Shown in pieces: positions 7,184-49,100 of a stretch of DNA of 64,000 nucleotides (position 1 is the first letter of the stretch; each line of letters begins with the position of its first letter). The notes below the pieces were generated by a model. The model had not been told where the DNA came from and did no database searches. It saw only the letters and a program-made list of their open reading frames with translations. The stretch comes from Octopus sinensis (Eukaryota): NCBI RefSeq assembly GCF_006345805.1, contig NC_042997.1:207390001-207454000 (forward strand). Reading direction: 5' to 3'. A program made the translations under genes and the position numbers.

Positions 7184-10100
7184 GTGAGTAAATAGATTCA
7201 TGTAACTTATTTATATTTAATTGTTATTTCATTTCCAAATGAGGAATCATTAAAGTTAATTAAAACATTTTCTCAATCAAACTCAAACATTTCATTTCCT
7301 TCACATCTGATATCTTGAGTATATCTTTTGCTAACTTTAACAACCTCAAACTTACTACAGCCATTCTGTAGAGCCTTTCTTAACAACAATATCAACTGCA
7401 ACAACGTATCTCTCTTCTCTCCACGGAATGTTCCTTAGTTGTTTACCATTAATTACTTTTGTAGGTTGATGTCATCGTTAACAGCTCCAATAGGCATCTC
7501 CAGCTTGACAAAGGGTCTATCTCCAAATTTATTCTTTTTGCTGCTGGTCTCCAAATGCAAGATGAATGTAACCAGAGATATCCTCAAGGTATTTCTGCAT
7601 CGGAAATAGCCATCACTAAAGGATATAACCTCAACTGTAAGAATGTATTTCATCTGGCATTACATGAATGGGATGAATATTATTCTCATTCAGTAAGTAT
7701 CAATCATATGATATTGATTTATTGAAACGGTTAATGTTGTGTGAGAATCATAAAGCAAATGACAGCATCCTTTTTAATATTAGTTCTTCCAAGTTATCAT
7801 TGGAAGGAAGCAGAAGATATCGATGAACAGGACACTTTTATATATAAATAGAAGGGAAAAAGCCTCATGGCCTAACAACAGTTATGCGACTGATAAATAA
7901 GACTATATTAAAACATATTTCTCTGTTTTACTCTCTGTATTGGTGAGTTTTTCTCTGTCATGGCATGAGCACTAGAGAGGTTGTCATGTCCTCAACAACA
8001 CTAAAGACTCCTCTTGGGTCTGCATTGTCTCTCTTCATTCGACAACCATTTTACACGGTGGATTGGGTCGGTTTTATTGTAGCAGCAACATGAGTGAGGT
8101 TGCCTTGTCCCTTGCAGGACTAAAGAGTGATAGGAATGACAGTTGTGAGAGGAGAATATATTTATTACAACTAAATGGTTTCTTCCTGTAAAAAGAAAAT
8201 AATTTAATAAAATGTCTATTACCATTTACTAGACACTTATTTTCTTTTAGATTCTGGCAAACTTGACTCAAATAATAACCACTTGTCTGAAAAAAGCTGA
8301 GGAATTGGGAGCAAAAAGCCTTGCATTTCCTATATTAGGAGCTGGAACATTGAAGTACCCCATTGAAATCCTACCCAGAATTATGTATGAAGCAGTGAAA
8401 AACTACTCAAATCAAAATTCAAGCCGGATCAAAGATGTTTACTTTGTCGTTTATCCTCAAGACACAGAAATTATGAAGGTTGGTTGATGATTTTGTTGTT
8501 TGTTGTTTTATGATGATGATGATCATCATCATTATTTAACATCCATTGTCCATACTGGCATGGGTTGGACTGTTTAACCAGTGCTGGCAAACTGAGGGGT
8601 TGCACCAGGCTCCGGTCTAATTTGCCATGGTTTCTATGGCTCGATGCCTTTCCTAGCACCAATCATTCTGAAAATGTAATGGGTGCTTCCTATGTGCCAC
8701 TGGCATGGATGCCACTTACATGACACTGGCAACTGCCAGTTTGCCTCTATGAGGCCCAACGCTTGAAAGATGCTTTTTACATGCCACCAGCATGGGTGTC
8801 AGTTATGTGACACCGACAATGGCTACAACTATGAATTTGCTTGGCTTGACGGCTCTTCTCAAGCATGGCATATCACAAAAGGTCTCGGTCACTAGTCATC
8901 TACGAGGCCCAATGTTTGAAGATTATGCTTCACATCTTGTCCCTTGTCTTTCTGGATCTTGCATTTCCACAGCTTCAATCCACAGGTAGAAATTGGTACT
9001 TCTTCACACAGCTGTCCACATCCATACACATCACATGACCATACCAGCACAGTTGTCGCTCTTGCACACCACATCTAATACTTGACCAACTTTTCTATCA
9101 AGACATTTACACTCTCTCTTACATTTTTGGAAGTTACCAAAGGAAATATTCTGCAATAAGTAAAGAAAATAGAAACAAAAATATGGAATCAGTTTTGTAA
9201 ATTTATTTGTTGGTGTCTTAGAATTCTTCAGTTGGAATGTTGGAATCTTTGATGTGTCTCATGGCCCTGTCTTCCATACTTTTAGGTTAGCTTGGTTTTC
9301 TTCAACTCTTCCATTCCATGATTTAATTCTTTGTAACTTGATATGGATTCAGTGCAGCTACCTCCTCCTCTACAACTACCACCACTACCACTACCTACCC
9401 ACAACATCCTTCAACAATTCCATTTTGGTTACTGACCAACCAAAAATGTGTTAATGGCACCACCAGAACACTGATGGTTTTCTTTCATTTCTGTTCTTCA
9501 AAGTGGAACGCTTTGGAAACTCTTCCCACAATTCTTTACATTTCTTCTCAAAGTTGGATGAATCAATTAAGGGGCTTCTATGCTGTGGCTTGACTTGCTA
9601 GTAATAGCAGCCAAGTGTCCCTGGCAGAGTTTTAAGGGGGTCAGATAGGATACCTTCTGCTATTTGTTTCAGCCCTTGGCATTCTGGGTTCAATTCCTAC
9701 TGGTGTCACGATTGATAAAAATATTCCAATCTTGGCAGCTGGATTGATGGAACTGGAAGAATACCAAATCTTCTTCTATGGTGTTTGTTTCATTCTGGGT
9801 TCAAATCCTGTCATAGCCATGCTGGATTGTTAATTCACTCCATCGTTTCTTTTCACACCAACCCTTGGCACTTTGGTAACTTGGTTACAGGTGCATGAGT
9901 CCTCTCTGCTGCAAGCTATCTTGTAAATTTCCAGGGCCTGTTATTGTTGTTGTTGTTGCTGCTGCTGCTGCTGTTGTTGTTGTTGTTGTTGTTATGGCGG
10001 TCAAGTATGGCAACCCATACTTGACAGGTACTTCTTCACACAGCTGTCCACATCCATACACATCACATGACCATACCAGCACAGTTGTCTTTCTTGCACA

Positions 10101-46100: not shown

Positions 46101-49100
46101 TTCCCCACTTTATATAGAAATCGCCCATAGATATTTCCCTACACCACTGCTAGATCACTCTTTTGCCTATCAACTTCAAAGCTCTCCACTGGAAGATGGT
46201 ATGATTTTAATATATTGAGCCTCATGGCCTCTTCTCAAGGTATGTTCTTTTCTATTTCTTCTTCCCTTCATTTATTTTATTTTACACATTTGTATTCACT
46301 CTGATGAAGCTCCAGATCGAATGTCCTATGAAGATGATGAATATTAGTTTTGTAATTCTTTCATTAGCACTGACTGGCATTGGCAGCAGAAACAGCCGTA
46401 AGAATTGTTTTGTCATGTTTTGTATTGAAAAGTAATCTATAGATGTGATCCAATTTGTTTCTTTGTTGATCAAAAGTGTTCTTCATTTTCTGATTATTTA
46501 AATTTCATTGCCTCACAGAGGCAATGACAGGAGACCGTGACCTTTGGAGATATGCTGTGATCGAGAAGACCCTGCGACTAAAGTGAGATCGCAACCACAC
46601 ATGTCCAGCCCTGTTAAGAATACTCCTGATGTGCCAAGCGATATGATATGCTTGAGAAGACTTGTTGAGTCAAGTAAAACCAATATCGTAGCTGGGACCG
46701 TTGCCTTCTGACAGACTCCTGTGCCAATGGCATGTGAGGAGCACCATCCAAACATGGTCCATGCCAGGACTGTGCAAATATAGCCTTGGTGTCAACTGCA
46801 AAATGAGAAATGTGGTTTACCGAATGAAGTGCATGAATGGTGATTATAAAAACCAGAAGACTACATTATCATCATTGTTTAACATCCGCTTTCCATGCTA
46901 GCATGGGTTGGATGGTTTGACTGTGGGGCTGGCAAACCAGATGGCTGCACCAGGCTCCAGTCTTGATCTGGCAGATTTTCTGCAGCTGGATGCTCTTCCT
47001 AACGCCAACCACTCTGAGAGTGTAGTGGGTGCTTTTACGTGCCAGTCAGGTGGTACTGGCAACGACCTCGCTCAAAATTTTACACATGGGCCAGTCAGGC
47101 GGTACTGGCGACGACCTCGCTCGAATTTTTTACACCTACCAACGGCACAGGTGCCAGTAAGGCGATGCTGGTAACGATCCCACTCGAATGGTGCCTCCTA
47201 CATGCCACCAGCACGGAAGCCAGTTAGCCGCTCTGGCAATGATGATGCTCAGATGGTGCTCTTAGCACCCTACTAGCACGGGGCATAAGTGCCAGTTATG
47301 CGAGGCTGGCAAGAATCATGCTCGTATGGTGCTCGTGCCCGTCATCGAATTTCACTTTGATTTTGATTTTGGTTTTGATTTCACTTGCCTCAACAGGCCT
47401 TCGCAAGCAGAGATTAGTGTTCAGAGAAGGAAAAGGTACGTACATAGATAGGTGAAATAGTAAGAAGTTTGGCCAAGCATATAAATAAACATTGGAGAGG
47501 ATACAAGGATTAGAGGCAAGCCTCAATACTCTACCAGTATGCCAAAGGACAACATGGTGGTGTACTGAACCGAATCAGCATAGAAATCTTGTCTAGACAC
47601 CCAGACAATGCATTGCTACAACAGATACAATATTTTTTCATGTGCCACCAGCACAAATGTCAGAAAGGCGACGCAGGTAATGATCACGCACAATGGTGAT
47701 TTTACGTGCCACTGGCACGGAGGCCAGCTTGTTGTTCTAGCAACAATCATGCTCATATGGTACTCTTAGCGCTCCACTAGCACGGGATGCCAGTCATCGA
47801 ATTTGATTCTGATTTCACTTGACTCAACTGGTCTTCGCAAGCAGAGTTTAGTGTCCAATGAAGGAAAGGTACGCATAAGTGAGCTGGTTACACCCCTGGC
47901 ATAGGCCACAAGGTTATGGTCCCACTTGAGCTTGCCGAGTCTTCTCAAGCACAGCATATTTCCAGACGTCCCAGTCAGTAGTCATTGCCTCGGTGAATCC
48001 CAATGTTTGAAGGTCATGCTTCACCACCTCATCCCAGGTCTTCCTAGATCTACCTCTTCCACAGGTTCCCTCAACCATTAGGATGTGGTGCTTTTTCACA
48101 CAGCTATCTTCATCCATACGTGTCACATGACCATACCAGCGCAGTCGTCTCTCTTGCACACCACATCTGATGCTTCTTAGGTCTAACATTTCTCTCAAGG
48201 TACTTACACTCTGTCGAGTATGCACACTGACATTACACATCCATCGAAGCATACTGGCTTCATTTCTTGCGAGCTTATGCATGCCCTCAGCAGTATATAT
48301 ATACATATATACATATACAAACGTTATGTAAATACATAGTGAGACTAATAGAAATGAAATTAATATATATATACAGATAGTGAAAGTAATTAAAAAATGG
48401 AAACCATATAATCGTGAAACTATTATATCACATTACAATAGAGATATTATTGTTTCACTTTTGACACGTAATACCAAAACAGTGTAAAAGATAAGAGATT
48501 TCTCTGGGCTTGCATTATGCAAGAAGTTGAAAACTTCTTTGGCCCATAACACTGCATGGACCCTAAGTAAGGCATGTGTAAAATTTGAATGATATTGGTT
48601 GGGTAGTTCTCAAGTTTTAGTGATGCACACAGAGACACACATTCATTTTCAGGTTTATATATATATTGATGAATAGAAATGTAAATTTAAAACAATATTT
48701 GTGATAGAAGCAATGAATTAAAACATTGCATTGTAATTAAGAGAAATTAATTAGGAAATTATTTTTTCATTGAGTGATGATAAATTATTTGCTTACTTCT
48801 AACAGAAATTTAAAGAATATTTCCAAGAAATTTCAACAGATGGTTCAACTGCATCATCAGGTAAATTCTTTCTGTTTACTTATATTAAATTTTATTTAGG
48901 AAAAAAACTAGTCTCTTTTCATGGTGGTGGTGGGAGGGGGGCATGGTGGTTGTTGTTGTTCAGGAGGTGAGCTGGTAGAATCATTAGCATGTTGTGCCTT
49001 TAATAAAAAAGAGTATTATTATTATCATTGAGTGAGAGAGCAGCATATGCCATTGTAACAGGATGAGAGTTCAGGAACACTGGAGGGTTGTCCGATCTGA

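What the first reader, a model, noticed from the sequence alone, without database searches (positions are those of the whole stretch)
8479..48860. An old module duplication overwritten by a recent 6.8-kb homogenisation tract
Seen: outside the near-identical block the paralogy continues but is much older. D1 and D2 are both 55 nt yet share little beyond KFxEY. The intron segment at about 9125-9176 (ggaagttaccaaaggaaatattctgcaataagtaaagaaaatagaaac) matches 19365-19413 (ggaatttaccaaaaaacaatattctacaagaaacaaaggaaatagaaat) at only roughly 75%. Two very different divergence levels in one duplicated unit imply two events. Inference: an ancient exon-module duplication followed by recent conversion or unequal crossover, so the macrodomain array may be cycling through concerted evolution.
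Basis: partly seen in the sequence, partly recalled or inferred. Interest (0 to 1): 0.7.

Follow-up and report, generated by a model that had tools for sequence, protein, structure and literature searches.

The report
Recently homogenised octopus macrodomain exon modules
Two old copies of a four-exon macrodomain unit inside an octopus PARP14/15-like gene recently came to share a 6.8-kb stretch, but their coding exons remain a patchwork of older variants; this is a clear, fairly ordinary case of concerted evolution in a fast-evolving immune-type gene family.

Summary
D1 (11988-12042) and D2 (48806-48860) are both 55-nt exons in the same phase, 58% identical. After a 605-nt retroelement in copy 1, 9123-9175 aligns to 19359-19412 at 81%, far above chance. 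The near-identical block is 1703-8517 = 12518-19358.

The window is an Octopus PARP14/15-like gene: two in-frame A-B-C-D macrodomain modules plus three PARP catalytic exons.

- D exons group by position across loci and species.
- Exon A and the 5' third of exon B group within the window.
- In four of five other Octopus genes with two scorable modules, the modules are only 71-78% alike.
- The closest sampled O. sinensis locus has both modules but lacks the 5.3-kb intron duplication.

One refinement. The block is not one clean tract. The upstream intron differs by 0.37%, exons B and C by 10.5% and 8.3% (dS 0.13). At 59% of the differing sites both alleles also occur in other family modules, so the exons carry old variation in patches. 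Other loci show independent homogenised tracts elsewhere.

Unresolved: conversion versus unequal crossover, and the nature of the left edge. This is a new member of a known kind, of moderate interest.

The parts
1703..8517 (+). Copy 1 of the near-identical block: TE-filled intron upstream of exon A1, exons A1, B1, C1, both short introns, and 39 nt after C1
   Evidence: 84 substitutions in 6812 sites versus 12518-19358
12518..19358 (+). Copy 2 of the block (module 2). Both of its flanks are collinear with module 2 of O. sinensis locus L003
7047..7183 (+). Exon A1 (137 nt). Its twin A2 is 17867-18003; 1 difference
7465..7692 (+). Exon B1 (228 nt, first half of the macrodomain). Its twin B2 is 18285-18512; 24 differences, all within 7536-7687
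8251..8478 (+). Exon C1 (228 nt, second half of the macrodomain). Its twin C2 is 19092-19319; 19 differences, 13 of them within 8266-8305
11988..12042 (+). Exon D1 (55-nt linker, D1-type 'KFDEYLL...')
48806..48860 (+). Exon D2 (55-nt linker, D2-type 'KFKEYFQ...'). Identical to the D2 exon of L003 and of P0041
8518..9122 (+). SINE-head/LINE-tail retroelement present in copy 1 only. It marks the right end of the block
   Evidence: 8519-9118 matches 29627-28952 and other copies
9123..9175 (+). Old paralogous start of the C-to-D intron, module 1. Its partner is 19359-19412 (81%)
19359..19412 (+). Old paralogous start of the C-to-D intron, module 2. 87% identical to the same segment after module 2 of L003
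7536..7687 (+). Patch B3: copy 1 differs from every compared module (19-28 of 157 sites), while copy 2 is close to L001 (6/157)
8216..8232 (+). Patch at the 3' end of intron B-C: copy 1 matches L003 module 1 (0/35), copy 2 is closer to L003 module 2 and L001
8266..8305 (+). Patch C5: copy 1 matches L003 module-2 type (2/60), copy 2 is nearer module-1 type (4/60); 13 differences in 40 nt
1371..2690 (+). LINE coding sequence that runs without a break across the left edge of copy 1 (1703)
   Evidence: tblastx 1617-1808 versus 22088-21897, 1617-1814 versus 52280-52477, and 1845-2690 versus L001 16759-15824
12345..12517 (+). Truncated fragment of an older LINE (to 12512) plus 5 nt of filler. It abuts the mid-LINE start of copy 2, so this is a true breakpoint
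5814..6243 (+). Single-copy intron piece (twin 16630-17059) whose only outside homologue lies upstream of exon A of module 2 in L003 (29872-30285, 86%)
56563..59773 (+). Three PARP catalytic exons (56563-56696, 57084-57261, 59505-59773) that follow D2 in frame

Best explanation
The window carries most of one Octopus PARP14/15-like gene. It has two in-frame four-exon macrodomain modules (A 137 + B 228 + C 228 + D 55 = 648 nt each), followed by three PARP catalytic exons. The two modules are old paralogues. Recently, a non-allelic homologous exchange between them made at least 6.8 kb about 99.6% identical. The exchange was either an unequal crossover or a long gene conversion, and module-2-type sequence now sits in both places. 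The shared stretch covers a transposon-filled upstream intron, exon A and both short introns. The identity ends on the right where module 1 carries a 605-nt retroelement that module 2 lacks; beyond it only the old 60-80% paralogy remains. Within the last 1.3 kb the tract is discontinuous. The 3' two-thirds of exon B, the last 35 nt of intron B-C and the 5' quarter of exon C carry much older alleles that are shared with other family members. These patches were either left unconverted (patchy heteroduplex repair, or selection against homogenised exons) or re-imported by short conversions from other paralogues. The same process acts throughout the family, so the array does evolve in concert, with the exons kept more different than the introns. 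SHOWN: coordinates, reading frame, divergence levels, the mosaic, positional versus within-gene clustering, and absence of the intron duplication from the closest sampled relative. INFERRED: the recombination mechanism, its direction, and any role for selection.
For: GENE MODEL: the eight exons read through as 432 aa with canonical splice sites. Pfam finds Macro (2.5e-18) and PARP (7.2e-20). The catalytic exons follow D2 in frame. Annotated O. vulgaris P0041 (609 aa) and O. sinensis P0044 (637 aa) have the same two-macro-plus-PARP layout. OLD PARALOGY: D exons, their flanks and the post-C segment; modules 71-78% alike in four other genes, and a clade of second modules. RECENT EVENT: the upstream intron shows 20 substitutions in 5342 sites, 0.37%. 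L003 is collinear with the window, and 9183-9662 is 98-100% identical to it. Its modules share only a 614-nt tract (96.4%) and an 84% match around exon C. MODULE-2 ORIGIN: 5814-6243 has its only homologue upstream of L003 module 2. Exon A differs from L003 module 2 at 6-7 of 95 sites but from module 1 at 18-19 of 119. The 39 nt after exon C differ from module 2 at 1-2 of 39 sites but from module 1 at 11 of 38. MOSAIC: exons B+C hold 43 of 84 substitutions in 456 of 6812 sites (odds ratio 16, p = 6e-29). dS is 0.134 against 0.0037 for the intron, and dN/dS is 0.68. A runs test on site patterns gives P = 0.0007 against L001 and 0.013 against L003 module 1. At 38 of 64 differing sites both alleles occur among four outside modules. 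FAMILY-WIDE: exons are more diverged than introns in all 15 module pairs. Independent tracts exist in L001 and L003.
Against: The left edge shows no old homology, and the evidence on direction conflicts. A LINE reading frame is continuous across 1703 in copy 1, whereas copy 2 starts mid-LINE next to a broken older element. Taken alone, that would make copy 1 the source. Only three outside loci were available at DNA level, and L003 is itself a mosaic relative to the window: 77% in the Q-D1 region against about 99% in 9183-9662. Polarising with it is therefore not safe. A PHI-type recombination test on 19 family modules (protein alignment) was not significant (P = 0.12). No reads were available to confirm the assembly. 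No transcript data confirm that the two modules are spliced into one mRNA.
Confidence: 0.72

Rival explanations
1. A simple recent segmental duplication, with no older module pair: one module was copied once, and everything else is later decay.
For: The 10.8-kb spacing and the 99.6% intron identity look like a young duplication.
Against: A tandem duplication would give two full 10.8-kb periods, but only 6.8 kb is shared. 1-1702 does not match 10816-12517, and 8518-12517 does not match 19359 onward. D1 and D2 each have closer relatives at the same position in other loci and species than they have in each other. Two-module genes with 71-78% module identity exist in O. sinensis. Exon dS of 0.13 cannot arise in the time that gave 0.37% in the intron.
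Confidence: 0.04
2. Assembly artefact: two haplotypes or a mis-joined repeat placed side by side (a false duplication).
For: 0.37% is in the range of heterozygosity. No read data could be checked here.
Against: The window has no Ns. The two copies sit in different flanks on both sides, and each right flank is collinear with a different module of L003. The copies differ by 8-10% in two exons, with alleles seen in other loci, and by a copy-specific 605-nt TE and a 22-nt deletion. Two-module genes are annotated in two other species.
Confidence: 0.06
3. A clean recent duplication or conversion, followed by accelerated point-mutation divergence of exons B and C under positive selection.
For: Macrodomains of PARP9, 14 and 15 evolve under strong positive selection in primates (PMC4038475). 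Differences pile up in exons. dN exceeds intron divergence in all pairs.
Against: Synonymous divergence is also 36 times the intron value, and dN/dS is 0.68, not above 1. Differences come in tight multi-nucleotide clusters. At 59% of differing sites both alleles already exist in modules of other loci or species. Site patterns form runs.
Confidence: 0.06
4. The intron identity reflects independent insertions of the same young transposons, or LINE 3' transduction, and not recombination between modules.
For: The block begins inside a LINE and is rich in TEs. Young repeat pairs at 99.2-99.9% occur elsewhere in the window.
Against: Identity runs without a break through several different elements in both orientations, through single-copy intron (5814-6243), and through the exons and their introns. 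There is no poly-A or microsatellite tail or target-site duplication at 19358. The introns are retained, and the sequence after the block is collinear with the old paralogue.
Confidence: 0.02

Closest known systems
Macro-PARP genes PARP14/PARP15 (vertebrates) and clustered PARP14-like paralogues in invertebrates
   Same: Macro and PARP catalytic domains are present. The two-macro-plus-PARP order matches the description of mammalian PARP15 as a partial PARP14 duplicate holding two macrodomains and the PARP domain. Recurrent duplication and loss, and rapid macrodomain evolution, are documented (PMC4038475). Clustered PARP14-like paralogues in lancelet and sponges are noted in PMC13224862. In Octopus many paralogues lie on one chromosome.
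   Different: No WWE or other PARP14 N-terminal domains were found in the window. The usual GG-x-D type ADP-ribose motif region reads KGSIS here (my reading of the sequence; function untested). The papers searched for gene conversion do not describe intragenic concerted evolution of the macrodomain exons: the term has 0 occurrences in PMC4038475 and in all but one of the 12 papers listed.
Concerted evolution of duplicated genes with selection keeping particular exons apart (for example the RHD/RHCE model of Innan, and MHC-type mosaics; recalled from my own knowledge, not checked here)
   Same: Introns and flanks are homogenised while coding segments stay divergent. Alleles are shared between paralogues, tracts are patchy, and relatedness changes abruptly along the sequence.
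   Different: Here the units are exon modules inside one gene as well as paralogous genes in a cluster. Overall dN/dS is 0.5-1.0, so selection for diversity is not demonstrated.
'Exons more diverged than introns' in toxin families (snake venom PLA2, three-finger toxins; 'accelerated segment switch in exons'; recalled from my own knowledge)
   Same: Exon divergence exceeds intron divergence in every pair, and differences occur as short switched segments.
   Different: Both synonymous and non-synonymous sites are elevated here, and the segments can be traced to other family members. Shuffling of old variation explains the pattern without hypermutation.

Membership tests
Macro-PARP (PARP14/15-like) gene | Macro domain(s) | tested here: met
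   Pfam PF01661, E = 2.5e-18 on module 1; two modules are in frame
Macro-PARP (PARP14/15-like) gene | PARP catalytic domain downstream in the same reading frame | tested here: met
   PF00644, E = 7.2e-20. D2 to 56563-56696 to 57084-57261 to 59505-59773 reads through to a stop codon. The same junction 'TASSESVPDTW' is present in P0041
Macro-PARP (PARP14/15-like) gene | WWE domain between the macro and catalytic domains (PARP14) | tested here: not met
   tblastn with the WWE-containing N-terminus of P0014 matched only the first catalytic exon. P0041 also joins D2 directly to the catalytic part. The layout is therefore PARP15-like, not PARP14-like
Macro-PARP (PARP14/15-like) gene | Both modules spliced into one mRNA | not testable with these tools
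   Only frame compatibility, canonical splice sites and annotated relatives are available
Concerted evolution by gene conversion or unequal crossover | Paralogous units within one genome or gene more alike than units at the same position elsewhere | tested here: met
   Exon A and the 5' third of exon B: copy 1 versus copy 2 differ at 1/208 sites, against 6-16% to L001, L002 and L003. The window's modules are sister in the tree
Concerted evolution by gene conversion or unequal crossover | Parts outside the tract keep the old, position-specific relationships | tested here: met
   D exons and flanks group by position: 88-92% within a type, 58-63% between types
Concerted evolution by gene conversion or unequal crossover | Mosaic site patterns and alleles shared with other paralogues | tested here: met
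   Runs test P = 0.0007; both alleles shared at 38/64 sites. A PHI-type test on the protein family was not significant
Concerted evolution by gene conversion or unequal crossover | Independent tracts in related loci | tested here: met
   L003 614 nt at 96.4%; L001 602 nt at 97%; P0041 and Argonauta P0048 modules 96% alike; P0044 D exons near-identical
Concerted evolution by gene conversion or unequal crossover | Homology at both ends of the exchanged tract | tested here: inconclusive
   Right end: yes (old paralogy resumes at 9123/19359). Left end: no homology left of 1703/12518, and copy 2 begins at a broken-TE junction
Selection-maintained exon divergence (diversifying selection) | dN/dS above 1 in the divergent segments | tested here: not met
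   dN/dS is 0.68 for B+C, 0.69 in patch B3, and 0.53-0.98 across 15 pairs. Site-level tests were not run
LINE 3' transduction or retro-duplication | Tail, target-site duplication, loss of introns | tested here: not met
   Introns are retained and there is no tail at 19358. The downstream sequence is collinear with the paralogue
False duplication in the assembly | Gap or identical flanks; half read depth | tested here: inconclusive
   No Ns, and the flanks differ. Read depth cannot be tested here

The most novel reading that the evidence does not exclude
The octopus PARP14/15-like cluster keeps a library of short exon 'cassettes' (for example ...KKAEELG / ...TAERMG in exon C, and ...[14 protein letters not shown] / ...[14 protein letters not shown] in exon B). 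Frequent short conversions re-assort these among modules and genes, while the introns are swept clean. Selection then favours new macrodomain surface combinations. That would be a germ-line combinatorial diversification system for ADP-ribose readers or erasers in an invertebrate, presumably driven by viruses.
Probability: 0.2. Interest if true: 0.75.

Novelty: new member of a known kind. Interest (0 to 1): 0.45.

Why it matters
Macro-PARPs are among the fastest-evolving antiviral-type genes in vertebrates (PMC4038475), and almost nothing is known about them in cephalopods; only 3 papers in the searched library mention both octopus and PARP14. This locus shows module-level and gene-level sequence exchange acting on a large Octopus PARP14-like cluster, and it shows coding exons staying more different than their introns. 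That affects orthology calls, dN/dS scans and gene trees for this family, because trees built from whole modules will mislead. It also gives a concrete system for asking whether selection preserves macrodomain diversity against homogenisation. As a mechanism it is textbook concerted evolution, not a new kind of element.

Tried and rejected
- Pfam scan of the putative LINE pieces at both left flanks and of a minus-strand TE ORF found nothing. The LINE assignment therefore rests on tblastx to other copies and on my reading of motifs.
- Passing whole frames as DNA references failed because of stop codons.
- DNA for O. vulgaris P0003 could not be fetched because the gene range is too long. P0001 and P0041 are not on record. 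The best O. vulgaris comparator could therefore only be used as protein.
- Simple tandem duplication was rejected: only 1.63 periods are present, and neither possible phase fits.
- LINE 3' transduction was rejected because the introns are kept and there is no tail.
- Independent TE insertions were rejected because identity runs through single-copy DNA.
- Point-mutation divergence under selection was rejected on dS and on shared alleles.
- A search for the 53-nt segment in L001 was negative.
- A PHI-type test on 19 protein modules was not significant.
- The species could not be fixed. The best matches are O. sinensis and O. vulgaris, and no family protein from any annotated genome is identical over its whole length.

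
Full report
WHAT THE WINDOW IS. Translated exons hit only Octopus (and one Argonauta) PARP14/PARP15-like proteins. Pfam finds a Macro domain in the module (E = 2.5e-18) and a PARP catalytic domain downstream (E = 7.2e-20). On the + strand I can place eight module exons:
- Module 1: A1 7047-7183, B1 7465-7692, C1 8251-8478, D1 11988-12042.
- Module 2: A2 17867-18003, B2 18285-18512, C2 19092-19319, D2 48806-48860.

All eight have AG/GT splice sites, and each module sums to 648 nt. 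Joined, they read through as 432 aa without a stop. D2 splices in frame to three catalytic exons (56563-56696, 57084-57261, 59505-59773). Annotated O. vulgaris P0041 (609 aa) and O. sinensis P0044 (637 aa) have the same two-macro-plus-PARP layout. P0041 has exactly the window's D2 and its junction to the first catalytic exon. No WWE region was found.

CHECK OF THE OBSERVATION. The near-identical block is 1703-8517 versus 12518-19358. D1 and D2 are both 55 nt, in the same phase, and 32/55 nt identical. With flanks they align at 63.6% (E = 1.9e-5). Directly after the block, copy 2 continues with 19359-19412. In copy 1 a 605-nt SINE-head/LINE-tail element (8518-9122) intervenes, and then 9123-9175 aligns to that segment at 81% (75% over 61 columns). 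The local score is 32, against null maxima of 16-18, and BLAST gives E = 3.5e-7. The segment is unique to these two places. Apart from transposon families, nothing else in 8518-12517 matches 19359-48860.

THE BLOCK IS NOT UNIFORM. Of 84 substitutions in 6812 aligned sites, the 5.3-kb upstream intron has 20 (0.37%) and exon A has 1. Intron A-B has 7 (2.5%), exon B 24 (10.5%), intron B-C 10 (1.8%, six of them in its last 35 nt), exon C 19 (8.3%), and the 39 nt after exon C has 3. Exons B+C carry half of all differences in 7% of the length (odds ratio 16, p = 6e-29). Their synonymous divergence is 0.134, which is 36 times the intron value, and dN/dS is 0.68. New mutations since a young duplication cannot produce this, with or without positive selection. 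These exon segments have an older history than the DNA around them.

OUTSIDE SEQUENCES. Three loci could be fetched:
- O. sinensis L001: scaffold VCDQ01000060.1.
- O. bimaculoides L002: a 3-kb contig holding one A-C unit.
- O. sinensis L003: chromosome CM016859.1, the gene of P0046.

L003 has the window's exon order (A B C, a D1-type exon, A B C, then a D2 exon identical to the window's) and is collinear with the window in single-copy intron. Window 9183-9662 is 98-100% identical to it, and 18995-19586 (C2 plus what follows it) is 89% identical to the region around and after its second exon C. In L003 the two modules share only a 614-nt tract at 96.4% (exon A to exon B) and an 84% match around exon C. 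Its two upstream introns are unrelated. The 5.3-kb intron duplication is therefore specific to the window's lineage or locus.

- D exons with flanks group by position. Window D2 to L003 D2 is 88% (exon identical). Window D1 to L001 D' is 92%. Every D1-type versus D2-type comparison is 58-63%.
- The post-C segment exists after both modules of L003, and module 2 pairs with module 2 at 87%.
- Exon A and the first 71 nt of exon B are near-identical between the window's copies (1 difference in 208 nt) but differ at 6-16% from all outside modules.
- In 7536-7687 copy 2 is close to L001 (6/157), while copy 1 is far from everything (19-28/157).
- In 8216-8250 copy 1 equals L003 module 1 (0/35).
- In 8251-8310 copy 1 is L003 module-2 type (2/60) and copy 2 is nearer module-1 type (4/60).
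- Site patterns form runs (P = 0.0007 with L001 as reference, 0.013 with L003 module 1).
- At 38 of the 64 sites where the two copies differ, both alleles are present among the four outside modules. This is old variation that has been redistributed.

THE FAMILY. In a tree of 25 modules (exons B+C, 152 aa) the window's two modules are sisters (84% identity), as are those of O. vulgaris P0041 (96%) and Argonauta P0048 (96%). In O. sinensis P0042, P0043, P0044 and P0046 the two modules are 71-78% identical. The second modules of P0043, P0044 and P0046 form a clade of their own. In P0044 the two D exons are near-identical although the modules are not. L001 has a 602-nt intron tract at 97% next to clearly different D exons. 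The two-module design is therefore old, and different genes have been homogenised over different stretches. In all 15 pairs of the six DNA modules, exons are more diverged than introns (dN 0.08-0.15, dS 0.10-0.21, intron K 0.01-0.09). A PHI-type test on the protein alignment was not significant (P = 0.12; 46% of site pairs incompatible).

DIRECTION AND MECHANISM (inferred). The single-copy intron piece 5814-6243 (= 16630-17059) has its only homologue just upstream of exon A of module 2 in L003. Exon A and the 39 nt after exon C are module-2 type in both copies. Copy 2 also sits between flanks that are collinear with L003's module 2. Module-2-type sequence therefore now occupies both positions.

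The right end coincides with the retroelement that only module 1 carries, which is a natural stop for a homology-dependent exchange. The patchy 1.3 kb next to it is what heteroduplex repair near an exchange point would leave.

The left edge does not fit neatly. A LINE reading frame runs unbroken across 1703 in copy 1 (tblastx to two other copies). Copy 2 begins in mid-LINE at 12518, after an older LINE fragment cut off at 12512 plus 5 nt of filler. Two readings remain:
- (i) An unequal crossover between modules 1 and 2 made a three-module gene, and copy 2 later lost at least 1.7 kb by deletion. This predicts a near-identical Q-D1-S copy upstream of the window.
- (ii) A long conversion occurred whose left exchange lay inside a LINE already present upstream of module 1.

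A copy-1-to-copy-2 transfer with a non-homologous left joint is disfavoured by the comparison with L003.

RIVALS. Each fails on specific results given in the rival list:
- a single young duplication;
- an assembly false duplication;
- post-duplication adaptive point mutation;
- transposon-driven identity.

The assembly artefact cannot be fully excluded without reads.

WHAT IS KNOWN. Recurrent duplication and loss, and positive selection of macrodomains in PARP9, 14 and 15, are documented for vertebrates. Mammalian PARP15 is a partial PARP14 duplicate with two macrodomains and the PARP domain (PMC4038475). Clustered PARP14-like paralogues are noted for lancelet and sponges (PMC13224862). Only 3 papers in the searched library mention both octopus and PARP14, and none of the two listed concerns its evolution. 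Homogenised introns with divergent exons is a known outcome of gene conversion combined with selection, or of exchange with further paralogues (my own knowledge: RHD/RHCE, MHC, venom toxin genes).

VERDICT. The case is a new member of a known kind, of moderate interest.

Noticed in passing
window 27109-48668: Window 26679-27108 and 48669-48895 are adjacent in O. sinensis L003 (37290-37776 / 37776-37971). About 21.5 kb of the 29.5-kb C2-to-D2 intron is therefore an insertion block relative to that locus. It contains near-identical repeat pairs 37123-38016/38700-39593 (99.2%), 32583-33265/38015-38696 (99.85%) and 39991-41284/43349-44643 (99.85%), which look like young LTR-type or segmental repeats. 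It also contains an inverted 1.5-kb pair 27757-29254/36302-34805 (85.5%).
   Followed up: partly
window 48806-48860, 56563-56696, 57084-57261: At protein level, D2 plus all but three residues of the first catalytic exon are identical to O. vulgaris P0041. The second catalytic exon is identical, bar one residue near its end, to O. sinensis P0044, which differs elsewhere. Mosaic relatedness between family members extends beyond the macro modules.
   Followed up: partly
window 9123-9693 versus L003 9794-10368: Relatedness to the O. sinensis locus jumps from 75% (9123-9182) to 98-100% (9183-9662) within one alignment. This is another sharp boundary directly after the retroelement at 8518-9122.
   Followed up: partly
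window 11040-12123: The Q-D1 region is 96-98% identical to two places in O. sinensis scaffold L001 (1-1074 and 18460-19061) but only 77% identical to the otherwise collinear locus L003 (24313-25393). The C1-to-D1 intron is therefore chimeric relative to the sampled O. sinensis loci.
   Followed up: partly
window 7733 (copy 1) / 18554-18575 (copy 2): A 22-nt stretch is present in copy 2, L003 module 1, L001 and L002 but missing from copy 1. It is a deletion specific to copy 1, in intron B-C.
   Followed up: yes
L001 11459 / window 8518: The module in O. sinensis L001 carries a retroelement of the same family within 2 nt of the site of copy 1's insertion, although its neighbouring 39 nt are of copy-2 type. 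This is either a shared insertion plus later exchange, or an insertion hot spot.
   Followed up: no
window 60352-60882: A minisatellite with a 24-nt period (about 20 units) lies downstream of the last PARP exon.
   Followed up: no
window 49512-50769; 3010-3664; 13824-14478: A roughly 620-nt repeat family ending in an (ATT/ATA)n microsatellite occurs as a tandem pair after D2 and once in each copy of the block. Related copies stand in tandem in L001 (6237-8201).
   Followed up: no
window 27615-27781, 39726-39981, 44581-44846: Long arrays of 8-14-nt periodic simple sequence recur at several places in the large intron.
   Followed up: no
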